Source: Lytechinus pictus (taxonomy: Eukaryota). Taken from it: DNA of 64,000 nucleotides. Below are positions 23,150-58,403 of this stretch, one piece after another. A model generated the notes under the pieces. The model saw only the letters and a list, made by a program, of their open reading frames with translations, had not been told where the DNA came from and ran no database searches. Position 1 is the first letter of the stretch, and each line of letters starts with the position of its first letter. The position numbers were made by a program, and so were the translations under genes. Location of the stretch: NCBI RefSeq assembly GCF_037042905.1, contig NC_087259.1, forward strand, positions 9,796,001-9,860,000, in the 5' to 3' direction.

Positions 23150-23295
23150 TTAATCACGGGGTACATACAGCAGACGGTTTTCGGTGTCAGAAGGTAGATC
23201 ACTAATAGCATTCTTGGTCGATGTGTCGATCAGGGTCGCCTTAATATCAGCAGGTGAAAGGTTGGGATTCTTAGCTAGCAGTAGTGCTACAGCGC
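23150..23295 (-). CDS. Subtilase left copy exon 8 (terminal)
   Basis: ttccacag|GC GCT...; (G)[47 protein letters not shown]. Confidence 0.9.
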
Positions 23296-26200
23296 CTGTG
23301 GAATAACCATTAAAAAAATTGAGAAAAGAATGCTTGATTTTGGTTAAAAAGTGAGATATAGTAGCGTATTTCAGCATCCACTTCGGTGACGCATTCTGCA
23401 ACGTTCAGAATCTATTAATTGAAAATGCCGGTCAAATCACAGATAAGAAAATAGGTCATTGTCGAAGGTTGGTCGCCTCATCGCTCCCCAGCCGAGTCAA
23501 ACCAAAATGTAAGACCTGCTGGCTTCTTGCTAGGCGCTCAGCATTTAGATTGGAGATTGGTTATAATAACATGGTATGTAATGCCGGGCCCGTCAGAAGA
23601 ACATTTTTTTTAATTGAAATGTCTACCCTGGGTAAATAAATTATTATTTTTATTACAAAATCCCTCATGCTACGGGAGGTGTTACTGAATATCAAGTTGG
23701 GTTACTGATGAATTATATATTGGTTACATTTTCAAAGGCATGTATGTATATATATTGCCACTAAGTAAGCATGATCATGGTGCATTAAGGTCATCACCCA
23801 CCCCCCCCCCCCTCCCCCCGTCCATGTCCAACTCGTAATAATCTGACCCGCAAGGGTGTCACTATAGGTCCCATAAAACTCACCGGTAACGTGAGTGGTA
23901 GACACAGATGTACCACTTTGGGTCCGCGTGTCATCCGGTTTTCCAATCCATAGGCTTTTTATATCGTTACCAGGAGCAAATAAATCCACGCACGTCCCGT
24001 AGTTGGAGTAATCAGCCCTTCTGTCATTGATATCTGTTGCACCAACGGTTATAGCCTAAACAGTTAAAGATAAATGCCACCGAGTTTTGGTCACGATTTC
24101 GAAATGTATTTCGTACATAATCGAATCAAATTGACCATAGCCAACATAACAAAAACACGAAATATGCCAAAGGATTTTCGAAGAAATTGTGTAATTGCTG
24201 AGAAATTAGCAAACAAGAATGAAATTCGAGCAAACCACCCTTTTTCTTGAAAATCGGTGTTTTTGATACCCTTAACGAGTCCACGCGCGGACCGCGTCCA
24301 AAATTGAAAAAACACCCCTATAAACGCGTTTTTTTTGGTCACGCGTGTGTACATCAATATATTTGACTGCCCCCCCCCCCCCCCGGGCACGATGCCGGGT
24401 CTTTTTCCAAGCAATAGTGAGACACTGACCCTCATGTTTTGGCGATCTTCATGATAGATTTCATGATTCAATCAGTGAGCTTGCACCAAACAAGAGACCT
24501 TAAAGGAGAATGAAACTCTTGGAGCAAGTTAGCTTTTGTGAAAGCAGAAAAATCAAAGAATAAGATCAACAAAAGTTTGAGTAAAATGGGACTAGCAATA
24601 AAAGAGTTATGAGCAATTGAATGTCGAGATCACTAATGCTATGGAGATCCTACCATTGGCAATGCGACCAAGATCTATGATGTAACAGATGAACAACTCT
24701 CCCCTTTTGGACACTGAAAATATACCCCAAAACATCTCTTTTTGCTCATTCTAATCATATGACAAACGATTCATCAATGATATAATGTTGTGAAACCTCT
24801 GTACTTGTCCTCTCATAAAGAGAACACATCACCTTGTGATAGACTCAATAAAAGTGAGAATATAAGTGAAATAAGTACTAAAGTAATGAGGGAGTTGTAC
24901 GTGTGTGACATCACAGATCTTGGTCGCATTGCCAATTGGAGGATCTACATGCATGACATTAGTGATCTCAATATTCAAATGCTCATAACTTTCTTATTAT
25001 TCATTCAATCTTCCTCAAACTTTCAACAATATGTTTCTTTGATTTTTCTCTTTGATATGGATTCAGCTGGTTTCAAGGGTTTCATTCTCCTTTAATTGTC
25101 TTGGTCAACAGAACGACTAGATGAAAAAGAGGAGTTAGGAATACTTATTCTTATATTTTCACAGATGAATAAAGGAGAATAGGGAGTAATGAAGGAAGTG
25201 GTAGTTAATACACAAAAAAAATAATAATGAATGTGATATGACCTTAACTGTATGTATTGTTTTAGGTGTCACGGTGGTGATAGATGCGGGCGAACCCCTT
25301 GCCATTTTAAAACATAATGGTGCAACCCATAGGATACTTTCATTGCGCACCCCGTAAAATTGAGCGGTGACATTTTTTGTCAATATTTTTTTGAAAAATT
25401 CACTGCCCGTAAGAGTTCGATCTGATCCGCAACTATAATCATACAATGGGACCAAGATTTTGTCCAAGAATTCGAGTTCTCATTTCAGTGGAATCCGGGG
25501 GGGGGGGTGTTTCACAAAGATTTAAGCATATGACTTAGAGTCGCACTTAAATGTCTGTTTGCGTGCGGTATAAAAGGCATGACCGCATTGGTCAGATCAT
25601 CAGAAGAGGACGCGCTCTACTGCGTATTGATCAATAAGAGTGCGCTTTGTATAATATCTTGTATCTTAAGTGCGAAATAAGTCATACTTGCATCTTTGTG
25701 AAACACCCCCGGGTTACACTGTGAATGGGTCGGGTGTAAATAGAACCAACCTCTTGTACACCAGCAGGTGAAGAGGAGCAGGCACTGGTAGGACTATTGG
25801 CATTACGAGCTGATGCAACAACGGATATACCAGACTGAATAACTCTTTGAACGGCCTCGTCGGCTGCCGTGTTAGCAGGACCTCCAATGGACATCGAGGC
25901 AACTGCCGGCTTCACTCCAAAATTCACAAGGTAATCGCAGGCTGAAAGTATGACCAGAGAAAAGAGTAACATCCGATTAATCAATGTCATCCGATAGTTC
26001 ATCCATCAGATACGAAATTATACAACATGTGGTCCATAAACCCGTTGGGGTCGGGCTGTAAATTACACAGAGTATTTGTATGTGTCTTAGGAAGAGGGGT
26101 GGGCAAGTAATATAGGCCTACCAAAATTAAACAATTCCTACCTGGCGCAACAAGCATAGTTTTTTTCGTTACGTCATGGATGAAGTCTTTCGTTAACTAG

Positions 26201-29200
26201 GCCCATCATCACTTTGTAATTTCGCCGTTTTTTTAGATTGCAAATTATACATTTTGGTAAAGGTATGAGGAATTAGGAAAACAATGTTTCCTAGATGGCC
26301 GCCATCTTGGATTTTACAAAATGGCTTTCAAAAACAGGGTTTTCGATATTATCTCGGCTTCTAAGTAACCTAGAGTCCTAGACTCGTAATTTTTGGCACC
26401 TATAACTCATCGTTTCTGAGGTCAAGGAATCTATTGGTATCAATAAAATAAAATTTTACGAAATTCTTCGAGTTACCAGACTAGGAACTCACATAAAAGT
26501 TCAAATTTAATGTTGCAAATTTATAGCGACCTGATCATACCTTTCCTTAAGGCAAATATATAGCCAGTGTGTTATACATGTTTATATGGCATGTATTTCA
26601 GGTCACATGATCAAGGTCAATTGTCATTTAGGGTCAAAGAACTTTAAACATGTGGGGGTATCAACTTGAAATCTTTACCAATTATTTTTTTAAGTCATCA
26701 TAACTTGACGAGCGTATGGGTAATTAAATAATGAAGTATCAATTTTCATCTTGCATGAGTGTCAGATCATATGACCAAAGTCAAACTTCGTTTAGGGTCA
26801 ATGAACTTTTGACAATGTTATTGTATCAGAATCTAAACTTAATCAAGGCTAAGATTTAACCTTCTTATAATGGTCATGAATTAGTCCTATCGGGAAATGG
26901 ATGAATGGATTTTGGGTCAACTCAATATTCATATCAATTGAAATTGATAAAAAAAGGTTAGGATTTTACATTTTATACATAATTTTGAAATTCAAGATAA
27001 ACAAAATACAAACAAGGGAAACATGAATATAATGGTTATCAGATATCAAAATTTAGATGAGTATAATTTCAGCAGGGAGTTGTGAGGAGGCAACTCCCTG
27101 ATTTCAGGTTCTGGTACAAGGTCAAGAACATTTCTGATCCATTAAGTTGGGTTTAAAAAATATACTTTGTTAAGAAATTTTTCTTCAAATTGATCGTTTT
27201 CAACTGGGCATGGAAACAAAAATATATAAAAACCTCGAAATGCCCGAAATTACATTTTGTGCACTTTGGTTTCGCTCTTGTCTAATGTGCAGTGGGCCAT
27301 GAATATGGGGTGCCCAATTGACGAAATCGTATGGATCAAAACTTGCACGATGAATCAATCCGAAATTGCACGAATGATGACGCCATTGTAAAATTTACTA
27401 AATGATCAATATCAAACAACCAATCAAATTACAATGATCTATTTAGGTGTCATATAATCCTTGATATGTACCTGCTATAAGGGAACTCCATTGACCAGAG
27501 CCGCTGCAATCAAGTACCCTCAACCCATATATATTTACATTTGGTGCTACTCCGTACATGCTCGCTCCTATTGTTCCTGCACAGTGTGTGCCGTGTCCAA
27601 GACAGTCTATCCCCTAAAATGAAAAAGTCGTATTTCATGTGACGATTTTTAAAAAATAGATTTTTATCATCAAAGAATTTAATGTATCAATAACTTTCCA
27701 TAGCATGTAAAATTTGAGACCATTACGTCATATCTGATAATAAACATAATAATAATAATTACACATGTATATTGCACAATTTCTATATTCATATACTCAA
27801 CTGCGCATTACCATATTATTATTACCCCGCTATAGCCCTGCTGCCTACAGGCGCTCTGGCATTCAAGGAATTTCTTCCTACAGGGTACCCATTCACCTCA
27901 CTTGGATTGAGTGCAGCACAATGCGGGTAAATTTCTTGCTGAAAGAAAACACGCCATGGCTGGGAATCGAACCCACGTCCCTCATATGAAAGACGAGAGC
28001 CATAACCACTAGACCACGTCGCCACCACAAAATATCGATAAGTAAGATATTTAAAAAAAATGCGATAGAGTAAGACGACCGCCCCGGGGCGCTTTTGCGT
28101 CTGCTAAAGAGAAATTTTCCAAAAAAATCGTGCACACTTCTGCTGATTATTGTGAAAAAAATTAAGGTTTTCATTATTTCGGTGGGGTCCCTTTCTGCCC
28201 CCCCCCCCCCCGCTGCTAATGACCATGCAACCAACCACAGCAAGTCGGCCGCTGGTCCATAGCCATATAATAGCCCGGTAAAAATATTCGACGAGAAAAT
28301 ATCCGACTAATACTATCGTACTTTGGCAAGAGGAAGCAAGTTACAAAAGTATAATTTGTTGTAAATGAGCAATGTGTGTATATGTTCGTCATTTACAAAG
28401 GCGTCAATGCAATTACCTTTCCATAGAACGATAATTTCCTCCAAATATTTTGCCTGAACGTGCAATTCAAATTCAAATTCAAATTTATTTCCACAGTCAA
28501 AATATACATATATACAAATCAATAACATTAATAGATATATTACACGTGGAGGGGTCAAAGAAAGCACAACTGCTCGTTGGCCCCAATGTAAGAAAAAAAA
28601 ATCATAATAATACATGTAAAATGAACAATAACAATATAGCAACATACAAAGGGTGCTTCAGAAAAAACAATAACTCAAATTTGACTGATGTGTCACTTGC
28701 TTCCTTTTGCCAAAGTTGGGCAGAATAGACCTTATGCATTAACGTCATCGCACCGTCATCTTAGAGGCTGAATTGACCATTGCCTTGCATGCAATGCCAG
28801 CTGGTGCATGCATCTGTGACAAATCCTCTGATGGAGGGCGCTACGAGATCATGACGTCATATGCATATGGTCGATCAACTGTAATAACTTACAAACGGTC
28901 TACCGTCGTTGACTGCATCAAACGCAGGGGAGGCTCGTCCTTCATAGTACAAATGGTCTGGGTAGATTCCTGAATCGACGACATATACATTAACACCTGA
29001 TCCACAACCTGTATGAAAAAATAAAAATGTAAATGAATACATAGCCTTCAGCTTCATCCCTTTATGGAAGGTATCCTTATTTGCCGACAACTAATTTGTG
29101 CAATATCAGAACAGTCATGGCATTCGATAGACAGATAGACAATATGCATATGACGTCATTATTTCATTGCGCCCTCCCTCGGATAATATAGGAAGTTGTC

Positions 29201-32200: not shown

Positions 32201-35200
32201 TTTGAAAGAGTAAACATTACTTTTTTATACTGATTATTTCTTTTGAATAAAATATTTTGATAAATAAGTGAATTTTAAGCATGAAAAGATGCCTCAAACA
32301 TAATTTTCTTCCTCTTTTTTCTCTTGCAAATTGTGCAAAATTGTGTGTTTTAGGCACAAACATTATTTATATCATCAGAACGCTCAAACTCTGTACTTTC
32401 TTACTATGTCACTTTTGATATGTGGCACCTTTTAGATGGGTCAGCAGCCAGCTTTTTCCAACAAAATGCAAGACGAGATTTCTGAAATTTCTGAGTAGCA
32501 TAAAATCCAGAGTTCTGATTGGTTGATTAGTGTTTTCAAAACACCAGGCGCGGGTAATTTGATAAGATTACCACATGGTGAGTGTGACCTTGCAGAGGCC
32601 CAGTGTGGGAACATTGGAATTTGCGTGGGTGTGTGGTTTCTATGACCAATCAGAGCGCAGTGTTCTTGTTTTTAAACTGCTAAATGTACTTGGCCTATGA
32701 GAAGCTGGCTACTGACCTATCTAAGATACCTCTTCTTATAAAAATTATATCATATTAAAGCTTAGATCTTCAGCTTTATCATTGTCTAAAAATTATTAGG
32801 GCACAACCAGTAATTAAGTGTAAAAACAACAAGTTTTGTTGCATGAAAATAATTATTTTGTTTCATGTTTTAGATCAATGGTTTCACCTATGTTACAAAA
32901 TTGTTTTAAAAATCCAGACACGTGACCTAAAAGAATGATATTTCTTCTTTATAATGATACCAAAAACATGAAATTTGGTCAATATTTAGAGCAGCAATGG
33001 CCGAATAAAAAAGGTGTTTTCATCCCCACCAAGCTCATTAACAATGCAAAACCCCTCTAGTTATGAATATCACTTGGATAAAAGAAGCTACTTTTTGAGG
33101 GCTTGCCGACTGACTGGTATGGGCGTCCTCGCATCCCCATAAAATAAGCGGTATGCGGTCTTGACATGGTTGTGTGGCGTTCATCGGATTTGTTTGGGCA
33201 TGTCGGTTTTGCGATTCCGTGAGATTTGATCTGGCTAGGAGCGAAGAGTCAGAAGTGAAATAGAAAAGTTCTACCCCAACTGGTTGTATATTGCAACCGG
33301 AACGAACCGCTTCGTCAGGAAAAAGGGACGGTTCGGCTAAATGTGTATGTATAATTATGTATGTGTGCGTGTGTTCGTGTGTGAAGGAGAGGGTGAGTTG
33401 AAGACATATGAATATATAATTTATATATGTCTATATATGTATAATATGTCAATATAGAAATCCTCTCAAAAAAGAGTGAAATTCCACTTGTTCAAGTAGT
33501 TAGATGGAGAACAATCCCTTTTCGAGTGAAAAGCAGAGTGAACACGATATCACTCGGATGCCTGAAGACTTCAGGAGTTCTTCCCAATGGGTTTGTATTC
33601 GCCATGTTGATGCGATGCGCGATTCTCGAGCAATGGCGTGCCCACTTGTGATTGGTTATAAGTGCGAAATTCGCTTGCTTCGTATTGGTCAAGTTCTCCT
33701 TGGTCACACACTCGACAACACGAGTGATATTGAGCGAAAGATCGGCTGTGTACAGTAAGGAAAATTGACCACTCGGAAGACGAGTGAGGTAGCGGACGAC
33801 GAAATATAGTGCTGAACACTCGGATCAGAGTGAATAACCGCTCAATGAGGAGTGAACGTTTGTTCGTTACAATAACATCGAGTGACGAACTCGCTCGTTT
33901 ACATTTAGAGAGATATAATGTTTGTGTGGGAGGGTTGCGATAGTGTGCTAGAAAGAGAGCATGGAGAGGGGGAGAGCTAGCCAGGGAGAAAGTTTTTAAT
34001 TGCAACAAGATGAAGGCTCTTAGATTAATTAAAAAGGGATGGTCCGGGCTGAAAGCATTTATATCTAAACAAATAGAGTAAAATTCACAAAGCAAAATGC
34101 TGAAAATTTCATCAAAATCGTAAGAGAAATTACAAAGTTATTGAATTTTAAGGTTTATCAATATTTTGTGAAAACAGTTATATATGCACATCTTCATGAA
34201 TATTCATTAGATGGGCTGATGACAGGGGCTGCGGAATGGTTTTCAAAGTGGGGGGGGGGCTGAGCCAAAAGTGGGAGGGGGCTGACCTTGCAAAAAATCA
34301 CAATCTTATGGTCATTTTTACGTTTTTGTACACGGTTTTAGAAAAAAAAGTGGGGGGGGGGGGCTGAAGCCTCCACCTAGCCCCCCGCTTCCGCGGCCCC
34401 TGGATGATGTAACATCCCCACTTTCTTTGTTCTTATGTTATTACATAAAATCATCAATGTTTCATTTTTCATAAATGTGTAAATGATGTGTCTCCAATAT
34501 GATAAAATAAGTTGCGGCAATAATACATATTGCACTTAATCAGTTGTCAATCCAATTGTTTTAGTTTTTGGTAGAAAAAAATGAATAAACCTAATTTCAT
34601 ATAATAAAATACAAAAGAACAAGTAGGTATATGACACTCATCATTAAGACATACCTCGAACTGTTTCACCGGAATAATGAAAATCTTTAAAATTCAATAA
34701 CTTCGTTATTTGCTGTCCGATTTTGATCAAATTTTCAGCACTTTGCTTTGTCAATTTTACTTTATTTATTGAGATATAAAAATTGTCATCCTGGACCATC
34801 CCTTTAAAGAAAAATATGTCAATCTTTGGAACTTAAAAATACCCTTGGCCTTGTAAGCTCCATCCAGAGGCAATGAACGTTGATCTATTCGATCCAGACC
34901 CCACGACGCAACAGCCGCAGGGTGAATTTCTCCATCTTCAGTTATGTACTTGATCTCCTCTCGGGCCAGAAGCTATTAAAAGATATAAATAATGACTGTG
35001 AAAAATGTTTTTGTGCCCAAAATACAATAAGACTTTCATGTATATTTCGCCATGACTTGTGTTCGTTATTTATGTTGCATGGTCAAATAAATAAGGACAT
35101 ATCCCAGTTATCTATTTTCAACTCATATCACTTTTCAGTTTTCGCTTGAAACTGACGGCATCATAGGTCGCCACCAAAGGCTACAGTGCACATTATGTAT

Positions 35201-38200
35201 TCTTTCGTACTTCTGTAGAAATTGGAAGCTATTTGCATATCGTTGTCTCTCCATTCTTTTTACCTCCATGGTTCAATTATCAACTAAGTGCGTGGGGACA
35301 CGTAATGATTCCAAGCACTGATCTGATAGTATTCAGATCAGCAATCTGTATACAGATCAATGATTATAAGTTGCTAATTCATTTCATGACAACGAACGTA
35401 CAGGGCGTCAACCCATTGTTGTCGGTGTTGCTGCCCTCTACGTTTGTTGTTTCATGATTTCAAGTTGGTTATGCATATATTCATTTCCATTGATTATACC
35501 TTTTGAAGAGCTGTGTTGGTCAGTTTAGCTGAAAACCCATTGATGGCAGCAGTGTAGGTGTGCTTGATAGAAACATCGCCGAAACGTCCCGAGAGGTCAG
35601 TCAGAAGAAGTTTCTTGATCACTTCTACGTCATAACCGGGCTGCATGATCAAATAAACAATCAATACTTTTGATAATATTTGATTTTACAATAACATAAT
35701 TTTAACGATTTTTTTAGTATTTCACAATAATATATTGAAACGAAAAAAATGTAATGTTTCACACTTAAAATTCTGCATGACGTCACATTTCATTTTTCTT
35801 TTTTATATTCATCGATCATTATATTATACCTCGAAGGAACATGATTAAACAACATCCACACTCCAAGTTTGGTAGGTATATGTAAACGTGACACCAGATA
35901 ATATTATGACCACATGATTTCCTTACACTTACATACAGAGGGAGGGGGTGGCTTTCGGGCCACGTATACCCACACATTATTTTCCAAGACAAAGAAAAGT
36001 TGCACAACAAAAAGAGAAAAGCAAAGGGTGAAATACGGAAATCCATCCCAAAATTTCATGTTTGTATTATTAAAGGTTAATGTTTGTTGCTCGTTAGCAG
36101 GGTTTTTATAACATATCCCCCATACGCTATGTCTGGGTCCTGACATTGTTGTGCTCATTTAGTCACCGATTCCTGTTTAGCCCAATTGAAATCCTTTCTG
36201 TAATATTTCCCTGGTTCTAAAAGATATAATGGTGATACAATTCATAATTTATAAATCTTCATCACACATACTCATGACCATCTGAAATTGAATTCCGTTT
36301 TTCCTTCTTTTGGAATTACAAATGGGCAGTGGCGTAACAGGCGGGGGGGGGCAGAGCTCACCGGGAAAAAAAACCGGGAAAAAGAAAAAAAAAAGGGGGA
36401 AGAAAGGGAAAGGGAAAGGAAAGAAAAAAGGGGGAAGGGAAAGGAAAAGGGAAAAGAAAACTAAGAAAAAACATAAAAAAGGGAAAACGGAAAGATAACG
36501 GGAAAAGGAAGGAAAAAAAAACAAGTGACAAAGAACAATTCGCCCCGATATACAAATACATTAGCATGATTAGTAAGACAGGGAAATAAATTAAAGATGA
36601 CAAAAAGGCAAACAAAAGCGGGAAATAAAGGCAGAATGGAATTAGCCAAAATCTAAATTGGAAAATAAAGAATAGGGACAAGATAACGTACACTACCGGG
36701 CTGCCGAGGATTGAGATAACGAGCGGGAAGAAAAACGGATGGTATATAGCATAATGTCGTATGAAAGTCTATCATAAACTTGCTAAATCTCCTAAGGCTC
36801 TGTCCAAGAGTCAAGACCCCGTGCAGTGGGGGCTCTTCATCTGTAACCTTTAATGGGTTCTATAACGGGCCCTTATATGGACCCTTCCTGCATTAAGCTT
36901 TACGTTGAAGCACTGGCGTACCGGGGGGTGGTTCCACAGCCAAGGGGAAATAAAAGAAAATAAAGGAGGCAGCGAAATGAGATGAATGAAAAGAAATATA
37001 TGACATGATATTTGCTATAATAATGTAAAAATCTATCACATAATTAGAATTTCATTTCAACAGGCCTTTTTTTTTTGGCTCGCTTCGCTCGCTGGCGACT
37101 TTTTACAAATTTTCCCACATTTGCTATGGTGTGCCCCTCACAATATTTGGATGATTACGATACACAATTGCATTGAATTTATGTGTTGTGTTAAAGTTAT
37201 ATAAATATACACGCAATTTGATTAAAATAAGTGGCCATCTGTAAGGTTTAAAATGGCTTTGATATCAAGAGGTTCCGGGGCTCTGCCCTGGAGCCACCCA
37301 TAAAGCACTGTTATATGGATGAGTTTGGACCATGGCCCCCAAAAGTTCTACAACCAAACAAACAAAATGAGGAAAGAAAGGAAAGTGTATTATATTTTTC
37401 TGAATATCACGTTAAAATCTATCTTCATGTTAGATTCTCATGAAAAGGTGATTTTTTATCTCGCTCGCTTCGCTCGCTCGGGACCTATATTAAGCTACTT
37501 CTTGCCAAAAGCGCCATACTCGGCCCCCTCAAGCATATAGAGCTTCGCCCTGATGCTCACAATCATAAGTTCATAACAAAAATCCTGTTCACCGTGGCGT
37601 ACAAAAAAAAGAGAGAAAAAGAGGAAAGAGAGGAGGGTGAATATGATATCATCTTTTTAACATTATGTCAAAATCTATCACAAAATTGGATTTTTTGCAA
37701 TAAAGATGTCAAAAATATTTTGCTCGCTCACTTCGCTCGCTCGCTTATATATATATATACATTTGCCCGATACGCCATATCGCCCCCTCAAAATTTTTGC
37801 CTTATGACGCCATTGCCTGTTCAATGATATGAACGGAAAATGTTTGGTTTAGTATCTGCGCTATATAGATGGTCCATATTATTATTATTATAAAATGTCG
37901 AATGATTTCTGAAATGACCCGGTCGATCGACACATAATTTTCTGTTCAGATATGAAATATCAGATATCAACTGGTAGTGAACAGCTGTCCCTTTAAAGGA
38001 GAAATATATTGAAAATCGTAAAAATGGAGAATCATATATCAAATCAAAGGAGAAAATAAGGAGAACACGATGGTGTACATCATTTATCATGGAGACCGAT
38101 GGAACTCAGTTAATTGATAGTTTAAAGTTCTCTCTCTGAATGCTTCAAACACGCAGAATTACGTCCGCGAAATTGGGGATTTTTTATGACGTCACTTTCT

Positions 38201-41200
38201 GTACGAGAGGCGTGATTGGCCCTCCCACGTGAAGCTCCACTTGCATGCAAAACCTGTTGCGAGGGTACGTTTTCTCCACATTGTCACTGAATACTTCGAT
38301 CACGAAATGAAAGAAAACCCAGAATTTTATCTAGATTTGGATTTTCAAATTGATGATTTTGAAGATGAAGAGAATGATGATGAAGTGCACAAAGTGACGT
38401 AGTTGGGGGTAAATTGGGGGAATCGATGATGAGGAGTCGGACAATTCAACTTGCAACACGATCACATGCCGATTCGCTACCAACTCATGCAGCTGCTAAG
38501 TGCTAGCTGCACCGCGCGTGCCAAATTGAATTCACGAAAATGACTTACCACACTGTCCAGACAGAGTCTCTTACTTCTGTGACTATGAAGAAGGAAAATA
38601 ATGATAAAACTGTACTTACAAATAAGTGAATGTAATCCGAACCTGAAGGCAAATCAACTCAACGAATAGCAGCAGACGATATGCACCGATGATAAACTTC
38701 ATGTGGCTGGGATAGATTGTCACTCGTTCTGTTAGATGTAATTTTTATCTCATTAATTTGACAAAATTACGAAACTCGGGGAATTATTTATCTATATAAA
38801 AATATAGTAACATCTCGTATAATTTTTAAATTACGATAAAACGTTTTTTGAAGGAAAACGTTGAGGTAAAATTAAATTAGACGTAAAAGATCCCCAACAT
38901 GCGTAGCTTGATTGAGAGCTGTGCAACACGTGCATAGATCTACTCTCTCAGCCACTGGCGAGCAAGCAATACGGCATGTTTGTGATTTTGATTACGATCA
39001 CATATACGAGCTTTTAAAAGGTTTTATCGTAATTTAAAAAATAATACGAGATGTTACTATATTTTTATATAGATAAATAATTCCCCGAGTTTCGTAATTT
39101 TGTGAAATTAATGAGATAAAAATTACATCTAACAGAACGAGTGACAATCTATCCCAGCCACATGAAGTTTATCGTCGGTGCATATCGTCTGCTGCTATTC
39201 GTTGAGTTGCCTTCAGGTTCGGATTACATTCACTTGTTTGTAAGTACAGTTTTATAATTATTTTCCTTCTTCATAGTCACAGAGGTAAGAGACTCTGTCT
39301 GGACAGTGTGGTAATTCATTTTCATGAATTCAATTTGGCCCGCGCGGTGTAGCTAGCACTTAGCAGCTGCATGAGTTAGGTAGCGAATCGGCATGTGATC
39401 GTGTTGCAAGTTGAATTGTCTGACATCATCGGCGTAATTCCCCAATTTTACCTCCAACTACGTCACTTTGTTGTTCATTTCATCATCATTCTCTTCATCT
39501 TCAAAATCATCAATTTGAAAATCCAAATCTAGATAAAATTCTGGGTTTTCTTTCATTTCGTGATCGAAGTATTCAGTGACAGTGTGGAGAAAACGTACCC
39601 TGGCATTAGGTTTTGCATGCAAGTGGAGCTTCACGTGGGAGAGCCAGTACGCATCTCGTACAGAAAGTGACGTCATTAAATTCAAGTCAATTCAGAGACC
39701 GATGCGAGGCATATTTCGGAGAGGCATTTTGAGCGTTTTTTAATCGGCGATTTTCACCTTATGTATTATTTTCGTTATTTTTGAATGACCCACTGATAAT
39801 CCCCACATCATTACCTTTCCATTGACATATAATAAGACCACATTCATAATCAATATAGTTCTCCTTTAATATCATCCCAACGTGTTAAATTGATTTTAAG
39901 TGCAATTTTAACACTCGTGTCGCATGGAGACATTCTTAACGCGTATGAGACTTTCATATGGTTGTGCTACACAAACAGCGAAAGTGGACTGTTCTCAAAG
40001 CCGACGTCGGAATTTTGTGTATCACCAATTTTTCTTCTTGTTGTTGTTCCTTTATTTTATTTTATTTTATTTTTATTTTTTTTTATTGCTGGACTGACGC
40101 CGCCTCGGACTGAGTCCACATTTGGAAGTTGTTTGAAGGCGCCTTTAGTTCTACAGTTGGTATGTGTATCACCTCCAAGTGGACTCATGTCGGCTTTGAT
40201 CACTGAACTAGAAATAGCAAACAACAGTTATTGCTAACGAAATATGGAAAATGTTGGCGTGAAAAGAACGGCGACTCGTGTCACGTAAATAGGCGTCATC
40301 GGGGCCTGCTTTACGTGCATCAGGGAATATTGATCTCGAAGCGGCTTATTGTGTCCACTTTCGGCGTAAGTGTAACGCCACCAACAGTGCAGGCGCGAAG
40401 GTGGCTTGATAGGCGGGGTCGGAGACGGCTTGAAACCAGGCGAATGTGTATCAGCGGCCGTAGTGACCTACATATAGAGCTTCTTAAACTGACGCCAGCA
40501 TTGTTACGTGTCTTTTTATTATTTTTCCAGGGTTTTTTTTTTTGCATTTCATTGATTTTGATTTTAGACCTTGAGATCCCATGAGCTTCGAAGAGCGATC
40601 CGATCTTTCCTTACTGAAACTCTAAACCGTGATCTGCATAAAATCTGATTTTCGGTTTAATTCGATCCGATTTTCATTTAATTCTCAAAATCCCTTCATT
40701 GTTCATGCTACAAACAGCTCGGGTCTTATCTATATGTCGCTGCTTAGCCTCTTTTCCCGGCCGCGATTTTTCTTTTGTCGAGACTTGTGCACCCGATGCG
40801 AGTGGGTTTATTTAATCAGACTACGCCTCATGAATATTCATGGCTCGACTCGATTGGTGTGGCTCAATCAGTAAACCAATCCTGCAGTCGGTCTCAAGGA
40901 CGCAGGTTCGAGTCTCGAATGGAACGCCTTTTCACAGTTTTTGTTTTCATTAAAAGAAAATAAAAAGTCCAAGATTTGTGGTCTGATTCAAAGCCCATAC
41001 GAAACAGCCTATTATTATCGTCATTCCCACTGCCCTCTCGCGTCGGGTGCACAAGTACTGATGAAGAAAAAAAAATCGCATCCCGACTCCTTTTCGCCTT
41101 CTGCATACACTTGACGTCATGCCCTGGAACATCTCCATCTTAACATTTCCTTTGCATTTTCTCGGGATTAATTATTTATCGATACGATAATTTCAGTTTG

Positions 41201-44200
41201 GTGATAATTATTTAGCTATACGTATATATACAAAGTACTAGGCGTGCTGCAACGCTTTTAGAATGGGGGAACGAAGCTATAGGGGGCCGGGGGGGGGGGG
41301 CTTTCTGATGAAGTATAATATTTGCGTTTAGAGAGCATTTATAATAATTTTCTTTGGATTTAACCTTACTTAAAATTCACTGCGAAGAACTATTATCGTA
41401 TCTGACGAAAACTGTTCATTTTACTAAGTACGCACAGAGCGAGCGATCGTTAATGAGCTCTCAGAGTCTATCCGATTAGAAACTAATGTTTACATCAAAA
41501 TGATATCTCAGTTATACTTTCCTACCGTTTTGAGGGCGTTCCACGGTAAGAATGAGGTCCATGCCATTTTCATCAAATTCGACAGAGAGTAAAGATTAGA
41601 ACCTAAATATTCCATGAATAAAAAAGATAACACGAGTACACGTGCTTGATTTTTGTTTCTTTATTTCTTGCTATCGAGCTCTGAGGTTCACCCAATTGAG
41701 AGTTCTCGAGAATTACCCAATCAAAATAACTGGGCATATTTTTACACCTCACGAGATCACAAGGTTGAGTTTAAACCTCTATTACTCTAGTTAAAATCCA
41801 TTTGAATCTCATCACATTTTACAGTTCAGGATTGTATACCAAAGATGGCAAATCCATTTAATAATATTCATTTGCCATGTTCGCTCTTTTAAGGCTAGCA
41901 GCACCTTTATTTACGAAAAAAAATAGGTGAAAGATAACAAAAATACATCCTAAATATTCGAAATTTCTATAACGAATTAAAGAAGTACAATTAATGCTGC
42001 ACCTTCTTGAAAAACAATGCCATTTTCACCAAAAATTTGCAAAGTTCATGTGCTTGTTTGAATCACCTGTTCATTCATTGTGACATCATTGCGCATTGTG
42101 TGAAATGTGCATTCCCAGTCAGGATCGTTGCCCCCCCCCCCCGAAATTTTGAAAACTGAAAACAGTATAGTAAATGATGCCATAAGTATCCTACTCAAGA
42201 TGTAAAGTGCTCCAAAGCAGCATTTTTATCTCTTCAAATTTTAAAATGTACCCATCCGGTCACTGTTGGCTTCCAACACTATTTGTCACTAAGTCTACAT
42301 TGACTTGAATTATCTGACTATTATGTGCATCATTTGAGCTTAAAACTGCTTTATAATGCAATGTTTTACCATTGAAAAATAATACAATTTTCTAGCTATA
42401 CAACACCGCTTCCTCGTAGACATGGTAGATAAGCAATTTAATTTTTTTTTACTAGCTATGAGGTACCACAAATTCCTGTTTCCCTGATTTATATACTTAT
42501 CTAATTTTCAAAAAAAAAGAAAACGGATACATCTACAATACTATTTTTTTTTCTAAAAGCACACAACTTTTTTTAGATAGAAATAATCCTCACTCCGTCT
42601 AATAGAATTATTCCTGTCCCTAAAAAATATATTTGTTTGTTATGTATGAAAAAATAAAATATGAAAAGAAGACAGATATTAATTAGAAATGAGTTAATTC
42701 GGTTGTTTTCAAGGGGGTGGGATCCAGAGCGCTTCGCCTCTCCCCAATTGGCGGTGCCAAACAGTGAATGAGAGGAAGAAGAAAAGGAAGATAAGGAGTA
42801 AGAACAGTAAATGAAATAAAGGGAGGGGAATGATTGGAAATTGGATATATTTTTTCGCGTTAATATATAAAAATCAAAATTTCGCGCGCGCAGTGGCTGA
42901 TGTTGAATGATATAAATAAAAGGTCTGCTCAATAGGCCGGATAAAACGGAGCTTACTTATAAATCAAATTAAGCAAAAAATCATACACAAATGATTCTTC
43001 TCGCGTCTCGAGTTTGCATTATTTGTTTTTAGCGTAATGCGCATCCTGCACTATTTTATTCATATTTACAAAATAGTTACAAAATTTTCAGCTCGCGCTA
43101 CGCACTGGCATCAGCTGTTTAGTTAGATACCCTGTTCATGGTTACTAAAAACGTTCGGAAAGTCCAGCTATTATCTCAGAATATCAACAATTTTTAGCCC
43201 ACGCGTCGCACTCGCATTATTTATTTGGTAAGATATTATTTTCATTATTCACTGCAAACAGTCATTAACATGTTTCTTTTCAGGTCAGTATATCAACAAT
43301 TTGAGCTCCTGCTTCGCTCTCGACTTTTTGAACATGCAAAAAAAATTCGTGTCCGCCTTTGCCACTCTCTAAATATTCTTCTGCCCCACTTGCCTCTCCC
43401 CTAGTTCATATTATAAAAAAAAATCCTGGTGTTGCCACAGTATATCTCTTTGTATCAACGATTTACACGCTTTTCACATTCGTAGTTATTGAATTCAACA
43501 ATCGTAATAATTGTATATTACCCAGTTGTTGTGTGTCCGGACAGGTTGTGTGTCCGGACGATCAATTTTAGAAAGTCATTCGGAAAAAAATACAAGCGAA
43601 GTTTCATCAATTTTTAGTACAAAATGTTAGGAAATATTATAGAGAACAAAATAGTAGATGATTACAACTATTGAATTCACATTTTTAGTGTAATCCAAAG
43701 ACAAAAAAGAAGGCTTCAAAAATATAGTGTCCGGACACCCGACCCCCATCCTACTGTATATGCTAATAAATGGATATAGTTCTTCGATGATTATATATCA
43801 TGTTTATACCTTAATAATCAGTATCAATGCGTAATTATATATAGATTCAATGATCCCTCCAGACTACATGTAGCGTGCAAAGAGTCACACATTTCCATTT
43901 CGGTCTATTCTTAATTGTCACGAGCCTAATTGCAACATGAACGCACAAGATATTTATTCTACCGATATTTTATTTCTTACAAACAGGTTATTTACAAAAG
44001 AGTATTCATATGATTCGCCATTAACACTAAGGAATGGCTAGCACCGATCATCCTATTCCAATATGGTGAAGAAATATCACTGAACATTTGGAGCTACTTG
44101 TCTGGCGGAAGAATTAGAAATATTTTATTGTTCAGGTGATGAATTTGATCCCGTCAGGAGATGTCGTCATAAAAGTCGAATTCGTTTTTTTTTTAATGAA

Positions 44201-45465
44201 CGGGTCGAGGTACCTTTTTCTGGTCGAATATGGAACGTCAGATATGTAGCCTATCCACTGGTAATAAATTCTAGACCGTCTCATATCAGTATTATTTTAA
44301 TGATTTTTTAATGTGCCGTTTTATCACACGGGTCTAAGAAATATTATTTGCACGAGTGGCACCGATTGTTTGTCTCCTCGGTCCGAAGTGCATAAACTAG
44401 TATATTTGTTTCATTTATTGGTTTCTGCAACACTTTTCATAAACACATTAACAAAGAAAATACAATAATAATATATGCATAACTGACAAGCAAAACATTG
44501 AACAAATTTGCATTTTCTATTAATACATATCGATTTTAGAAGGTTGCAGGGGTTGCCACTATAAGCTAAGATTGACTGCGTGGCAACCACACACATTAAT
44601 CACGTTGTTTAAACACGCCACTCTAACAACTATAGTTAAAAGTTCTAAGCAGGTTATTTAAAGTTATTAACAATTTGTCTTAAAAATTTCCAAAAAATAA
44701 TCATTAAAAAATTTAAACAACTTGATAGAGTGGTGGGGTTAAACAATGTGATTAATAATAGTTAATAAAATTTAATGCGTAAATTATATAGCGTTATCAT
44801 TGAGGCTCATCAAAAGAGTATTAAAGAGCACTCGTGACGTCGTCATTTCATTTTAATGTAGGGCCTACACTTTAGATGTAACAGTCTTACAAGTTGTAAG
44901 ATTGTTGAATCAAAAGTGTGCAATAAAACAAAATTCATGATGAGGGACGTAATATGAAATAAATAGTTCAGAGTTCATTGAACCATAATATCTCATCACT
45001 AGTCTTGGTTAAGTATTATTCGTTGTATGTCCACTTTGATATATCATTACCATTATTCAAACTTCATATCAAATCACTTGATAATATACATAATTAAAAG
45101 GAAAAATGTCAAACTAGCTTGAGAATGACTCGGCGCACGTTAGTAAACAATCTTTAATTTCCGACATAAAAAAAAGTTCTGACATAATATGTACACTAAA
45201 AGAAACCATCCCTAATGTCATATTAGACAGCTTTAAGATGATTTTGGGGATCAGAATGGCTTCGGATGAGACTCTGCTTGTCTTAGAAACGGGGGTATAA
45301 TGAAGAAGGTGGGATCGACAAGGGAATGTAGTCTGAGCGACACTGACTCACCTTCAGTACAACTATGTAATGGTCTTTAATTGCCTCTTCCACCGTGTAG
45401 AATGTTGCATTTTTAGCACTTGTGGCTACCACTAAAGCTGACAAAATTACGACAATCAACTTCAT
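23150..45465 (-). CDS. Secreted proteinase K-family subtilase (peptidase S8A with I9 propeptide), left copy, 8 exons, 383 aa
   Basis: join(45465-45352, 35640-35500, 34972-34843, 29008-28893, 27613-27472, 25941-25751, 24055-23884, 23295-23150) = 1152 nt. All introns are GT-AG, with consistent phases 0,0,1,0,1,0,1. Motifs: signal peptide, [22 protein letters not shown] (Asp), GHGTHCAG (His), SGTS (Ser). Confidence 0.92.
23884..24055 (-). CDS. Subtilase left copy exon 7 (catalytic Ser)
   Basis: tttag|...|gtgagt; [57 protein letters not shown](G). Confidence 0.92.
24504..25091. mobile_element. TTAA-flanked (Kolobok-like) MITE
   Basis: TTAA|AGGAGAATGAAAC...GTTTCATTCTCCT|TTAA with ~190-bp imperfect TIRs. 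Confidence 0.8.
25503..25710. mobile_element. Harbinger-like palindromic MITE
   Basis: GGGGTGTTTCACAAAGAT...ATCTTTGTGAAACACCCC. Confidence 0.7.
25751..25941 (-). CDS. Subtilase left copy exon 6 (oxyanion Asn)
   Basis: tttcag|...|gttggt; (A)[63 protein letters not shown]. Confidence 0.92.
27472..27613 (-). CDS. Subtilase left copy exon 5 (catalytic His)
   Basis: ttttag|...|gtacat; [47 protein letters not shown]. Not in the ORF track; translated by hand. Confidence 0.92.
27745..28026 (-). mobile_element. tRNA-derived SINE
   Basis: On the minus strand: A box TGGTCTAGTGG, B box GGTTCGATTCC, core TTCAGCAAGAAATTTACCC...AATGGGTACC and an (ATT)n tail; homologous to 52580-52876. Confidence 0.8.
28720..28876. 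mobile_element. ~160-bp ATAGAC...GTCTAT MITE just downstream of exon 4 (left copy)
   Basis: Inverted copy of 29134-29301; carries TGACGTCATATGCATA. Confidence 0.7.
28893..29008 (-). CDS. Subtilase left copy exon 4 (catalytic Asp)
   Basis: catacag|...|gtaagt; (G)[38 protein letters not shown]. Confidence 0.92.
29134..29301. mobile_element. ~160-bp ATAGAC...GTCTAT MITE upstream of exon 4 (left copy)
   Basis: Short TIRs containing TGACGTCA; matching copy at 61537-61707. Confidence 0.75.
29700..29867 (-). mobile_element. tRNA-derived SINE (second family)
   Basis: Minus strand GGAGGTGTCGTGGCCGATTGGTCTAAGG...GGTTCGATCCC...GCCCCTGAGCAAGGCA. Confidence 0.7.
30314..30714. mobile_element. TTAAAG...CTTTAA-bounded element
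   Basis: Bounded by TTAA at both ends; its right end is related (inverted) to a fragment at ~24064-24217. Confidence 0.55.
30719..31294. mobile_element. TTAA-flanked (Kolobok-like) MITE
   Basis: TTAA|AGGGATGGTCCG...CGGACCATCCCT|TTAA; same family as ~34035-34804. Confidence 0.85.
31628..32032. mobile_element. Palindromic MITE built of ~20-bp TAGACCAAATGG/TTCGTCTA subrepeats
   Basis: CGGTAAATTGCCAGTTCGTC ... GACGAATTGGAGATAAACCG; related arrays at ~59930-60570. Confidence 0.6.
34035..34804. mobile_element. Kolobok-like MITE with a nested CAGGGGC...GCCCCTG element (~34223-34402)
   Basis: AGGGATGGTCCGG...CTGGACCATCCCT|TTAA; the insertion interrupts GGGCTGATGATGTCACATCCC, which is intact in the 30719 copy. 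Confidence 0.8.
34843..34972 (-). CDS. Subtilase left copy exon 3 (propeptide/mature junction)
   Basis: taatag|...|gtattt; [43 protein letters not shown](G). Confidence 0.92.
35500..35640 (-). CDS. Subtilase left copy exon 2 (I9 propeptide)
   Basis: atgcag|...|gtataa; [47 protein letters not shown]. Confidence 0.9.
36327..37815. mobile_element. hAT-like element (CAGTGGCGTAAC...TGACGCCATTG), left arm only
   Basis: Inverted termini, a purine-rich tract and GCTCGCTTCGCTCGC repeats; absent from the mirrored position (~55690); no intact TSD. Confidence 0.6.
37997..39865. mobile_element. 1.87-kb TTAA-flanked (Kolobok-like) element with an internal ~660-bp inverted repeat, left arm only
   Basis: TTAA|AGGAGAAATATATTGA...TCAATATAGTTCTCCT|TTAA. 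The empty site GATGATATTAAAGGGAC is at ~52479-52495 in the other arm. Internal arms 38187-38850 / 39015-39676. Confidence 0.88.
45352..45465 (-). CDS. Subtilase left copy exon 1 (signal peptide and start of I9)
   Basis: [38 protein letters not shown]|gtgagt. Confidence 0.9.
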
Positions 45466-46323
45466 CTTGCTTCTTCGCTGTTCGATCCTTGCTCGCCAAA
45501 GACGATTTAAAATCTTGCTCATGAACAATCTATATTTATGCGTGAAAGTTTTAGCGGTATCACTGACTAAAGGTATAATCCAAGTGTTACAAAAAGAATT
45601 ACAAACCTGGCACAATTCGAATCGGCTTTCACGCATCGGTGGGAGCTAATGATCGGTAAACCCCCTATCCGCATGATCCGCCAGAAGTGTTATTATCCAT
45701 TTTATTCTACATTTATCAATTCTGTATCAATTTTGATCCATAAGTTTCTTATGGATCGATAATCCTAAGGAAATGACACTCGCATGATTGTTTTGGACAA
45801 ATCTCAGATCAGATTACATTAAGATTTAAAAAACGGCTTAAACGAAGGATTGATCTATATTCACCTTTGCTCTTTGGATTTCCAATGTCTGCCGAGGACT
45901 TTGTCCCATTTTGTAGAGCACTGTTCTTTGTCACTTTTCTGACAGACCATTCAATGTAAGCTGCTTTTAATCTTAATGTGATATGATCTGAGATTATTCC
46001 AAGATAATCTTGCAAGACCGATTTATCGATTTCCCTTATAAAAAAACAACTTATGGCCCAAATTAAATACAAAATTGATAAATGTATAATAAAATGGATA
46101 AGAACATGCACTCCTGTCGGGTAGGGGGGGGTCACCGATCATTAGCTCCCACCAATGCGTGAAAGCCGATTCGAATTGTGCCAGGTTTGTAATTCTTTTT
46201 GTAACACTGGGATTATCTTTAGTCAGTGACACCGCTGAAACTTTCACGCATAAATATAGATTGTTCATGAGCAAGATTTTAAATCGTCTTTGGCGAGCAA
46301 GGATCGAACAGCGAAGAAGCACG
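45466..46323. promoter_or_regulatory. Shared bidirectional promoter/5' region of the two subtilase genes
   Basis: 858 bp lie between the divergent ATGs, with mirrored TATA-like CATAAATA at 46249-46256 (+) and 45533-45540 (-), ~70 nt upstream of each ATG. Confidence 0.6.
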
Positions 46324-46437
46324 ATGAAGTTGATTGTCGTAATTTTGTCAGCTTTAGTGGTAGCCACAAGTGCTAAAAATGCAACATTCTACACGGTGGA
46401 AGAGGCAATTAAAGACCATTACATAGTTGTACTGAAG
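46324..46437 (+). CDS. Subtilase right copy exon 1
   Basis: The 114-nt CDS is identical to the reverse complement of 45352-45465; donor gtgagt. Confidence 0.9.

Positions 46438-58364: not shown

Positions 58365-58403
<39 letters not shown>

What the first reader, a model, noticed from the sequence alone, without database searches (positions are those of the whole stretch)
23150..45465. The subtilase appears to share six intron positions with vertebrate PCSK9 but lacks the Cys/His-rich C-terminal domain
Seen: intron phases 0,0,1,0,1,0,1. Exon 3 starts at [13 protein letters not shown], exon 5 is 142 nt ([10 protein letters not shown]...SSLIA), and exon 7 runs AITVGAT...HVT(G). Recalled from knowledge, not checked here: human PCSK9 exon 3 starts at ALKLPHVDYIEED, exon 5 is 142 nt (ASKCDSHGTH...TLIG) and exon 7 runs VITVGAT...HVA(G), with the same phases. 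The Cys pairs DC..VLDC and AC..GTCVD also match; only intron 1 differs in position. Inference: although the protein resembles bacterial aqualysin/fungal proteinase K (WGLDRIDQR), it is a vertically inherited member of the PCSK9 lineage with a minimal signal-I9-S8 architecture, a view of the pre-PCSK9 enzyme.
Basis: partly seen in the sequence, partly recalled or inferred. Interest (0 to 1): 0.7.

Follow-up and report, generated by a model that had tools for sequence, protein, structure and literature searches.

The report
Sea-urchin protease gene sharing PCSK9 introns
This is an ordinary-looking, expressed sea-urchin gene for a secreted proteinase-K/aqualysin-type protease whose introns sit where introns 2-7 of the human cholesterol regulator PCSK9 sit, so the two genes share an intron-bearing ancestor; the gene family itself is already known.

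Summary
On the minus strand, 45465-23150, lies an 8-exon, 383-aa gene with all GT-AG introns in phases 0,0,1,0,1,0,1. It encodes signal peptide + I9 propeptide + S8A catalytic domain and stops where mature aqualysin ends. NCBI's Lytechinus pictus model has the same exons (99.2% identical protein). Spliced transcript contigs confirm introns 4-7 and read through the stop.

Papers fix human PCSK9 introns at codons 69/70, 133/134, c.657/658, c.799/800 and codon 394. Introns 3 and 6, and the phase of intron 7, I only recall. Anchored on invariant motifs, six of the seven sea-urchin introns coincide with PCSK9 introns 2-7; intron 1 does not.

The same 8-exon structure occurs in four other echinoderm classes and a hemichordate. 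No PCSK9 C-terminal module was detected in the genome, but that search had no positive control.

The family is already described: "PK-like" convertases (62 loci in S. purpuratus), and sea-cucumber members named PCSK9, one an active gut collagenase. This copy is a young echinoid duplicate, head-to-head with a paralog, with altered active-site surroundings, so it is a poor portrait of the ancestor.

I could not import a PCSK9 sequence, so no joint phylogeny was run. The scan found the same pattern earlier on other DNA of this genome (s1-311594).

The parts
23150..45465 (-). Whole coding span of the 8-exon PK-like subtilase gene (383 aa; ATG at 45465, TAA at 23152-23150)
   Evidence: model. (99.2% identical to NCBI L. 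pictus P0152:20-402 with the same exon structure). (spliced contigs).
45352..45465 (-). Exon 1 (114 nt): signal peptide (about aa 1-17) and start of the propeptide, ending ...YIVVLK. Followed by intron 1, phase 0, 9711 nt. This intron is NOT at the PCSK9 intron 1 position.
   Evidence: The AlphaFold model has an N-terminal helix 2-14 at low pLDDT. Human intron 1 lies at codon 69/70, which by my recalled numbering is about 14 codons upstream of the equivalent VVVLK motif.
35500..35640 (-). Exon 2 (141 nt), I9 propeptide. Followed by intron 2, phase 0, matching PCSK9 intron 2 (codon 133/134), 8 residues before the Y-I-x-E-D motif.
34843..34972 (-). Exon 3 (130 nt): end of I9, the expected autocleavage region and the WGLDRIDQR motif. 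Followed by intron 3, phase 1, in the Gly codon 11 residues before catalytic Asp140.
   Evidence: The human position (codon 175, 11 residues before D186) is recalled, not tool-verified.
28893..29008 (-). Exon 4 (116 nt) with catalytic Asp140 (28976-28974). Followed by intron 4, phase 0, 6 codons before catalytic His.
   Evidence: The junction is seen in an X1 contig. Human c.657/658 = codon 219/220, 6 codons before H226 (the H226 numbering is established knowledge).
27472..27613 (-). Exon 5 (142 nt) with catalytic His174 (27595-27593) and the Cys171/Cys203 pair. Followed by intron 5, phase 1.
   Evidence: Human exon 5 = c.658-799 = 142 nt. Hemichordate exon 5 is also 142 nt.
25751..25941 (-). 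Exon 6 (191 nt) with oxyanion Asn261 (25804-25802) in a derived context (SARN instead of AAGN, plus a 2-residue insertion) and Cys269. Followed by intron 6, phase 0, directly before AITVGAT.
   Evidence: Human c.996/997 is recalled. PDB ranges put the start of exon 7 at PCSK9 residue 333.
23884..24055 (-). Exon 7 (172 nt) with Cys300 and catalytic Ser328 (23908-23906) in a derived motif ([12 protein letters not shown]). Followed by intron 7, phase 1, in the Gly codon 8 residues after Ser.
   Evidence: Human exon 8 starts in codon 394 = S386+8.
23150..23295 (-). Exon 8 (coding part 146 nt): end of the catalytic domain, then stop TAA. The mRNA continues into the 3' UTR. No C-terminal domain.
   Evidence: An X1 contig runs across the stop. 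The piece aligns to residues 232-273 of the 276-residue mature aqualysin-1.
46324..61949 (+). First four exons of the head-to-head paralog (46324-46437, 56363-56503, 57776-57905, 61834-61949), with the same intron positions and phases. The rest lies beyond the window. It corresponds to NCBI P0158.
   Evidence: Its exon 7 lies at C15:9865539-9865709.
35496..56507 (.). Near-palindrome of about 21 kb centred near 45,900. The arms are 85-97% alike and cover both promoters, both exon 1 copies (100% identical), both first introns and most of exon 2. Similarity between the introns is lost downstream of exon 2.

Best explanation
The region is a real, transcribed sea-urchin (Lytechinus pictus-type) gene for a secreted zymogen of the proteinase-K/aqualysin branch of subtilases (MEROPS S8A; the 'PK-like' family).

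Proposed mechanism. The protein has a signal peptide, an I9 propeptide that should act as folding chaperone and inhibitor and be removed autocatalytically just upstream of the WGLDRI motif, and a catalytic domain. That domain carries Asp140/His174/Ser328, oxyanion Asn261 and the two aqualysin-type Cys pairs. There is no further domain. It most likely acts as an extracellular serine endopeptidase (digestive or matrix-degrading), as was shown biochemically for a sea-cucumber relative.

Evolution. It is one of at least 49 family loci in this genome. It forms a head-to-head pair with a paralog, and the 5' halves of the pair are being homogenised by gene conversion. The family's 8-exon structure (phases 0,0,1,0,1,0,1) is conserved across echinoderms and hemichordates. 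Six of its seven introns coincide with introns 2-7 of vertebrate PCSK9. PCSK9 and this family therefore descend from one intron-bearing PK-like gene present no later than the deuterostome ancestor. PCSK9 is the fast-evolving derivative; whether it gained its Cys/His-rich domain later or this family lost one cannot be told from these data.

What is shown: gene model, splicing, domains, conservation of the structure in Ambulacraria, and coincidence with five literature-fixed PCSK9 intron sites (four of them shared).

What is inferred: protease activity, autoprocessing, secretion, and the common-ancestor scenario.
For: - Gene model and phases. Identity to the NCBI model.
- Spliced contigs at depth 100-185 covering introns 4-7 and reading through the stop.
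- Pfam Peptidase_S8 (4.5e-41) and Inhibitor_I9 (8.1e-09).
- D140, H174, N261, S328, C171, C203, C269 and C300 are invariant in a 45-sequence alignment.
- AlphaFold model with pLDDT 89.9.
- Foldseek top hits are Meiothermus keratinase and aqualysin I (48% identity, TMt 0.95). PCSK9 pro+catalytic constructs give TMq 0.81 at 29% identity.
- The same 8 exons and phases occur in Patiria, Anneissia, Amphiura and Apostichopus and in Ptychodera.
- Human exon limits. Exon 7 maps to PCSK9 333-393.
- The bacterial top hits are separated from all ambulacrarian sequences by a 100* branch.
- dN/dS is 0.36 against the L. variegatus ortholog.
- An active collagen-degrading intestinal member exists in sea cucumber (Yan 2014, as cited in PMC5897022).
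Against: - No PCSK9 sequence could be aligned or placed in a tree here. Human introns 3 and 6 and the phase of intron 7 are recalled only.
- Intron 4 is not fixed within the family. It lies 6 codons before His in this gene, Ptychodera and human, but 7 in Apostichopus P0173 and 8 in Patiria, Anneissia and Amphiura. The exact match there could partly be luck within a 2-codon range.
- The protein is far closer to bacterial aqualysins (48%) than to PCSK9 (about 31%).
- The active-site surroundings are unusual: Gly to Arg before the oxyanion Asn, a 2-residue insertion, and loss of Met and Pro in the SGTSMAxPH motif. dN/dS is 0.54 over residues 250-345, so full activity is not assured.
- Three 2026 RNA runs show almost no junction reads. 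The tissue of run X1 is unknown.
Confidence: 0.75

Rival explanations
1. This copy, with its L. variegatus ortholog, is drifting away from proteolysis towards a binding or otherwise re-specialised role. It may keep only self-cleavage, in parallel to what happened in PCSK9.
For:: AAGN becomes SARN (L. pictus) or AALN (L. variegatus), with a 2-residue insertion after the oxyanion Asn. SGTSMA[CT]PHV becomes [10 protein letters not shown] or SGTSMSTVHV. All other family members and the bacteria sampled keep the consensus. dN/dS is 0.54 in residues 250-345 against 0.36 overall.
Against: The triad, the oxyanion Asn and both Cys pairs are intact. dN/dS is well below 1. The confident AlphaFold model keeps the subtilase fold. 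DSG instead of DTG is normal for subtilisins. There are no functional data either way.
Confidence: 0.15
2. The gene is a bacterial aqualysin-type gene acquired by horizontal transfer in the echinoderm or ambulacrarian lineage and unrelated by descent to PCSK9. The intron matches would then be parallel gains at preferred sites.
For: The best structural and sequence matches are Thermus/Meiothermus enzymes at 45-49% identity. NCBI names the proteins 'aqualysin-1-like'. PK-like genes are absent from 15 of 23 animal genomes surveyed (10.1101/802215).
Against: Six of seven introns coincide in position with PCSK9; the phases are literature-fixed for introns 2, 4 and 5 and recalled for 3, 6 and 7. The chance estimate is about 6e-13. 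The structure is fixed across Ambulacraria. Bacteria do not interleave with the animal sequences. PK-like genes are also reported in Capsaspora and Acanthamoeba.
Confidence: 0.03
3. This particular gene is the one-to-one sea-urchin ortholog of PCSK9 (a 'proto-PCSK9'), as opposed to one of many co-orthologous or paralogous family members.
For: Exact agreement of intron 4 (6 codons before His) and of the 142-nt exon 5 with human.
Against: At least 49 loci match exon 7. The same features are present in the hemichordate gene. The gene sits in an echinoid-only clade that arose by recent duplications. No synteny or joint tree was obtained.
Confidence: 0.05

Closest known systems
Vertebrate PCSK9 (proteinase-K-like proprotein convertase 9)
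   Same: Signal peptide + I9 prodomain + S8A catalytic domain. Introns 2-7 fall at equivalent codons (introns 3 and 6 recalled). The pro+catalytic fold superposes at TMq 0.81.
   Different: No Cys/His-rich C-terminal domain and no hinge exon. Only about 29-33% identity. Intron 1 lies elsewhere. The sea-urchin protein keeps a near-consensus protease core and belongs to a family of at least 49 loci, whereas PCSK9 is a single-copy, non-proteolytic LDLR regulator (established knowledge).
Bacterial aqualysin I (Thermus aquaticus, 4dzt) and Meiothermus keratinase (5wsl)
   Same: Highest sequence and structural similarity: 48% identity, TMt 0.95. Same catalytic motifs, same two Cys pairs, same C-terminal end of the mature domain.
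   Different: This is an animal gene with seven spliceosomal introns conserved across Ambulacraria. It has no bacterial-type C-terminal pro-sequence. Bacterial sequences form a separate side of the tree.
Echinoderm 'PK-like' convertase family / sea-cucumber 'PCSK9' proteases
   Same: Same family: 62 PK-like loci are reported in S. purpuratus (10.1101/802215). Two 'PCSK9' paralogs are described in Stichopus (Ren 2016, cited). A collagen-degrading intestinal serine proteinase is known from A. japonicus (Yan 2014). The A. japonicus protein named PCSK9 (P0226) clusters with P0173, whose gene has the same 8 exons.
   Different: This copy is an echinoid-specific, head-to-head duplicated member with derived oxyanion and Ser motifs. 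I found no paper reporting the shared intron positions with PCSK9 (searches limited to the held library).
Fungal proteinase K (Tritirachium/Parengyodontium album)
   Same: Same S8A subfamily and fold (39% identity, TMt 0.90), with an I9 propeptide.
   Different: Proteinase K has a different disulfide pattern (established knowledge, not tested here) and lower identity than the aqualysin group.

Membership tests
PK-like (proteinase K-like) S8A subtilases | Peptidase_S8 (PF00082) catalytic domain | tested here: met
   E = 4.5e-41, residues 150-384 of P0152 (= 131-365 of the window protein).
PK-like (proteinase K-like) S8A subtilases | N-terminal Inhibitor_I9 (PF05922) propeptide | tested here: met
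   E = 8.1e-09, above the curated cut-off.
PK-like (proteinase K-like) S8A subtilases | Asp-His-Ser triad in subtilase order plus the oxyanion Asn | tested here: met
   D140, H174, N261 and S328 are invariant columns in the 45-sequence alignment. Their contexts are shown.
PK-like (proteinase K-like) S8A subtilases | Closest solved structures belong to the proteinase K/aqualysin subfamily | tested here: met
   ranks 1-7 are keratinase, aqualysin I, proteinase-K-like and Vibrio-type enzymes. Searches agree exon by exon.
PK-like (proteinase K-like) S8A subtilases | Proteolytic activity after autocatalytic propeptide removal | not testable with these tools
   Only inferred. A sea-cucumber relative is active. 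This copy has a derived active-site neighbourhood.
PCSK9 (vertebrate type) | Exon-intron structure of the prodomain and catalytic domain (introns 2-7) | tested here: met
   Introns 2, 4, 5 and 7 match literature-fixed human sites. Exon 7 maps to residues 333-393. Introns 3 and 6 match sites I recall. Intron 1 differs.
PCSK9 (vertebrate type) | [quoted passage not shown] | tested here: not met
   Stop at 23150 directly after the catalytic domain. Transcripts read through it. No PF18459, PF18464 or PF18463 hit in the genome (no positive control rang).
PCSK9 (vertebrate type) | Orthology shown by phylogeny or synteny | not tested
   No vertebrate PCSK9 sequence or locus could be obtained, because similarity-ranked lists are filled by echinoderm and bacterial proteins.
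PCSK9 (vertebrate type) | Self-cleavage only, retained prodomain, binding of LDLR EGF-A | not testable with these tools
   Biochemical property; no data here.
Bacterial aqualysin | Bacterial gene without introns, with a C-terminal pro-sequence | tested here: not met
   There are seven spliceosomal introns confirmed by transcripts. The protein ends at the mature-domain end. The tree separates the bacteria sampled.

The most novel reading that the evidence does not exclude
The whole deuterostome PK-like family, PCSK9 included, could go back to a bacterial aqualysin-type gene taken up before the chordate-ambulacrarian split. It would then have gained its seven introns and expanded in ambulacrarians, while chordates kept one copy that became PCSK9. 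The high identity to Thermus/Meiothermus enzymes (48%, against 39% to fungal proteinase K) and the patchy animal distribution do not exclude this. Reports of PK-like genes in Capsaspora and Acanthamoeba argue against it.
Probability: 0.08. Interest if true: 0.7.

Novelty: new member of a known kind. Interest (0 to 1): 0.4.

Why it matters
PCSK9 is a major drug target whose protease fold no longer cuts anything but itself. Working, minimal-architecture relatives in sea urchins and acorn worms carry the same introns. That gives concrete genomic evidence that PCSK9 descends from an ordinary secreted aqualysin-like protease. It also provides natural comparators for asking which changes abolished trans-proteolysis, and whether the Cys/His-rich domain was gained in the chordate line or lost here.

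The gain is incremental. The kinship of PCSK9 with proteinase K and the existence of echinoderm 'PK-like' or 'PCSK9' genes are already published. This particular copy is a derived duplicate.

Tried and rejected
1. The spliced 383-aa protein has no single reference, so I searched exon pieces. The representative-library search with exon 6 gave no self hit, only relatives at 60% identity or less.
2. An alignment of exon pieces with full-length relatives (A1) then recovered the near-identical NCBI protein P0152.
3. I found no way to obtain a vertebrate PCSK9 sequence or locus. Every similarity-ranked list (150 or 120 rows) is filled by echinoderm and bacterial S8A proteins. The other top unnamed hits proved bacterial or S. 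purpuratus. So there is no joint alignment, tree or direct intron mapping of a vertebrate gene. I judged a length-filter trick unlikely to work and did not spend a search on it.
4. PDB searches with the exon 5, 6 and 8 pieces did not list PCSK9 among the rows shown. Only exon 7 did.
5. Paper searches for HGVS names fixing human introns 3 and 6 (c.523+, c.524-, c.996+, c.997-, c.1180+) found nothing for PCSK9. The supplement of PMC10643364 did not list exon sizes. Cameron 2008 is not held.
6. The PCSK9_C1/C2/C3 searches of the own genome were blank, but the control genomes also rang nowhere. This is weak evidence of absence.
7. RNA runs X9-X11 show almost only intronic repeat reads and 1-2 junction reads, so they say little about expression. 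The last paper search was badly posed and gave nothing on echinoderm aqualysin-like enzymes.
8. My exact spliced mapper failed on the Ptychodera model P0263, because that NCBI model mixes two tandem copies. A tolerant mapper solved copy 1.
Full report
WHAT IS THERE

The window has no N and is 34-44% G+C. On the minus strand I rebuilt an 8-exon gene by reading every junction and checking it by script.

The exons are 45465-45352, 35640-35500, 34972-34843, 29008-28893, 27613-27472, 25941-25751, 24055-23884 and 23295-23150. Their lengths are 114, 141, 130, 116, 142, 191, 172 and 146 nt. Every intron is GT..AG, the phases are 0,0,1,0,1,0,1, and the product has 383 aa ending in TAA at 23152-23150.

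One point needs correcting. The exon 8 acceptor is cacag|GC, so the 'YSTG' of the open frame upstream is intronic.

INDEPENDENT SUPPORT FOR THE MODEL

A profile made of the exon pieces plus full-length relatives found P0152, 'extracellular serine proteinase-like [Lytechinus pictus]'. Residues 20-402 of P0152 equal my model except for three substitutions. The genome is therefore L. pictus or something very near it, and NCBI's annotation uses the same exons. NCBI starts at an upstream ATG that adds 19 residues before the signal peptide; the L. variegatus orthologs start at MKLIVV.

In run X1, one 477-nt contig (depth 185) joins 23150-23294, 23883-24054 and 25750-25909. Another (depth 120) joins exon 5 to exon 4 and exon 6 to exon 5. 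A third runs across the stop codon into the 3' UTR. Introns 4-7 and the stop are thus seen in transcripts. Three 2026 RNA runs show only one or two junction reads, so expression depends on the sample.

WHAT IT ENCODES

Pfam finds Inhibitor_I9 and Peptidase_S8 and nothing else. In a 45-sequence alignment, Asp140, His174, Asn261, Ser328 and the Cys pairs 171/203 and 269/300 are invariant. AlphaFold gives a confident model (pLDDT 89.9).

Foldseek ranks Meiothermus keratinase, aqualysin I and proteinase-K-like enzymes first (48-49% identity, TMt about 0.95). Fungal proteinase K follows at 39%. PCSK9 pro+catalytic constructs cover the most of the model (TMq 0.81) but at only 29% identity, and the PCSK9 catalytic chain alone reaches 31-33%.

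The last exon aligns to residues 232-273 of the 276-residue mature aqualysin, so the protein ends with the catalytic domain. The next ORFs downstream on the minus strand are multi-pass membrane proteins, not a Cys/His-rich domain. Searches of the whole genome with PCSK9_C1, C2 and C3 found nothing. No control genome rang either, and split exons weaken such searches.

THE COMPARISON WITH PCSK9

I could not bring any PCSK9 sequence into the session (see Tried and rejected), so the human side rests on papers, one PDB result and recall.

- PMC10643364 (NM_174936.4) states that exon 2 encodes residues 70-133 and exon 8 residues 394-452. [quoted passage not shown]
- PMC8330577 lists c.657+1G>T as a splice donor and c.658-2A>C as a splice acceptor.
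- PMC8891005 lists c.799+3A>G and c.799+64C>A.

Human introns are therefore fixed at codons 69/70, 133/134, 219/220 (phase 0), after c.799 (phase 1, making exon 5 142 nt) and within codon 394. Introns 3 (c.523/524) and 6 (c.996/997) and the phase of intron 7 are from my memory of the RefSeq exon table. They fit the published frame statement.

I anchored the comparison on invariant motifs, with the catalytic residues numbered D186, H226 and S386 as in the literature. The sea-urchin introns lie as follows:

- Intron 2: 8 residues before Y-I-x-E-D.
- Intron 3: in the codon 11 residues before the catalytic Asp.
- Intron 4: 6 codons before the catalytic His.
- Intron 5: in the codon 41 residues after His.
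- Intron 6: directly before ITVGAT.
- Intron 7: in the Gly codon 8 residues after the catalytic Ser.

These are the positions of human introns 2-7. phmmer aligns residues 2-56 of the exon-7 piece to 334-392 of the full-length PCSK9 chain 2p4e_P, which is the extent of human exon 7.

The literature-fixed sums also agree in frame. Exons 3+4 are 246 nt here against 258 in human, exon 5 is 142 against 142, and exons 6+7 are 363 against 381. All differences are multiples of three. Intron 1 differs: it follows YIVVLK here, while human intron 1 lies at codon 69/70, about 14 codons upstream of the equivalent motif by my recalled numbering. A rough chance estimate for six exact hits is about 6e-13 (inference).

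HOW OLD IS THE STRUCTURE?

I fetched five loci of named relatives and mapped their proteins exactly onto the DNA. Patiria (sea star), Anneissia (crinoid), Amphiura (brittle star) and Apostichopus (sea cucumber) all have 8 exons with phases 0,0,1,0,1,0,1 at the same motifs. So does the hemichordate Ptychodera, which has two tandem copies and a 142-nt exon 5. The L. variegatus ortholog and the in-window paralog agree as well.

One nuance concerns intron 4. It lies 6 codons before His in this gene, Ptychodera and human, 7 in Apostichopus P0173, and 8 in the clade holding the Patiria, Anneissia and Amphiura genes. It always stays in phase 0. This intron sits in a variable loop and has slid by one or two codons in some paralogs.

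FAMILY AND TREE

At least 49 loci in this genome match exon 7 over its full length. A quick maximum-likelihood tree of 56 sequences puts the 11 bacterial top hits on one side of a 100* branch. It also shows several paralog clades that each contain more than one echinoderm class. The window gene lies in an echinoid-only clade, sister to L. variegatus P0156. The neighbouring paralog P0158 is sister to L. variegatus P0160, so the head-to-head duplication predates the split of the two Lytechinus species. The L. variegatus locus has the same head-to-head arrangement.

IS THIS COPY A GOOD 'PRE-PCSK9'?

Not particularly. Compared with every other family member and with the bacteria, this ortholog pair has changed AAGN to SARN (L. 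pictus) or AALN (L. variegatus). It has inserted two residues after the oxyanion Asn. It has also changed SGTSMA[CT]PHV to [10 protein letters not shown] or SGTSMSTVHV.

dN/dS against L. variegatus is 0.36 overall and 0.54 for residues 250-345. The gene is constrained, but loosely. Conservative members such as the hemichordate gene are better proxies for the ancestor.

WHAT IS ALREADY KNOWN

- A preprint defines 'PK-like' convertases as S8 + I9 + a proteinase-K-like catalytic domain. It counts 62 loci in S. purpuratus, notes their absence from 15 of 23 animal genomes, and cites PCSK9 homologs in amphioxus, sea cucumber and gastropods (10.1101/802215).
- Ren et al. 2016 described two 'PCSK9' paralogs in a sea cucumber (cited in PMC11574266).
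- Yan et al. 2014 purified a collagen-degrading intestinal serine proteinase of this kind (cited in PMC5897022).
- NCBI names one A. japonicus member 'PCSK9 preproprotein' (P0226).

I found no paper that combines PCSK9 with 'intron positions', so the exon-structure argument may be unpublished. The scan itself made the same observation earlier on three other genes of this genome (s1-311594).

VERDICT

The shared ancestry of gene structure with PCSK9 is well supported, though not yet closed for two human introns and not tested by phylogeny. The gene is an ordinary, already annotated member of a known family. The specific 'proto-PCSK9' reading is only partly supported.

Noticed in passing
window 35496-56507 (centre about 45,900): The two PK-like genes sit head to head inside a near-palindrome of about 21 kb. 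The arms are 85-97% alike from a spacer of about 130 bp out to exon 2. Exon 1 is 100% identical at the DNA level. Exon 2 is 92.9% identical, with 7 of its 10 mismatches in the last 22 bases. Exon 4 is only 80% identical. This looks like ongoing gene conversion of the 5' halves of a duplication older than the L. pictus/L. variegatus split.
   Followed up: partly
window 584-1237, 7388-8713, 12893-14383 (minus strand): Three tandem, apparently intron-less ORFs (217, 441 and 496 aa) encode related multi-pass membrane proteins. From their hydrophobic repeats they look like EamA/drug-metabolite-transporter-like proteins. No family search was run on them.
   Followed up: no
proteins P0154 and P0162: Two NCBI entries labelled 'Salmonella sp.' carry I9 + S8 + CUB domains and score like echinoderm CUB-type PK-like proteins. 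They are very probably mislabelled animal (echinoderm-like) sequences.
   Followed up: no
L001:1001-13910 (Ptychodera flava): The locus holds two tandem copies of the gene (about 1001-5206 and 9625-13907). The NCBI 'isoform X1' model P0263 spans both, and no single copy translates exactly to it.
   Followed up: partly
window 24500-25100 and 27700-28100 (introns 6 and 4): Intronic repeats are covered at very high depth on both strands in all RNA runs, and reads continue into unlike sequence at their edges. They are members of abundant transcribed repeat families, not part of this gene's mRNA.
   Followed up: no
window 45466-45522: An in-frame upstream ATG, used by NCBI's models P0152 and P0158, would add 19 basic residues in front of the signal peptide. 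The L. variegatus orthologs start at MKLIVV, which is the more plausible start.
   Followed up: partly
L002-L005 versus the window, exon 5 acceptor: Intron 4 has shifted by one or two codons between paralog clades: 6, 7 or 8 codons before the catalytic His, always phase 0. This is a small case of intron sliding or acceptor shift in a variable loop.
   Followed up: yes
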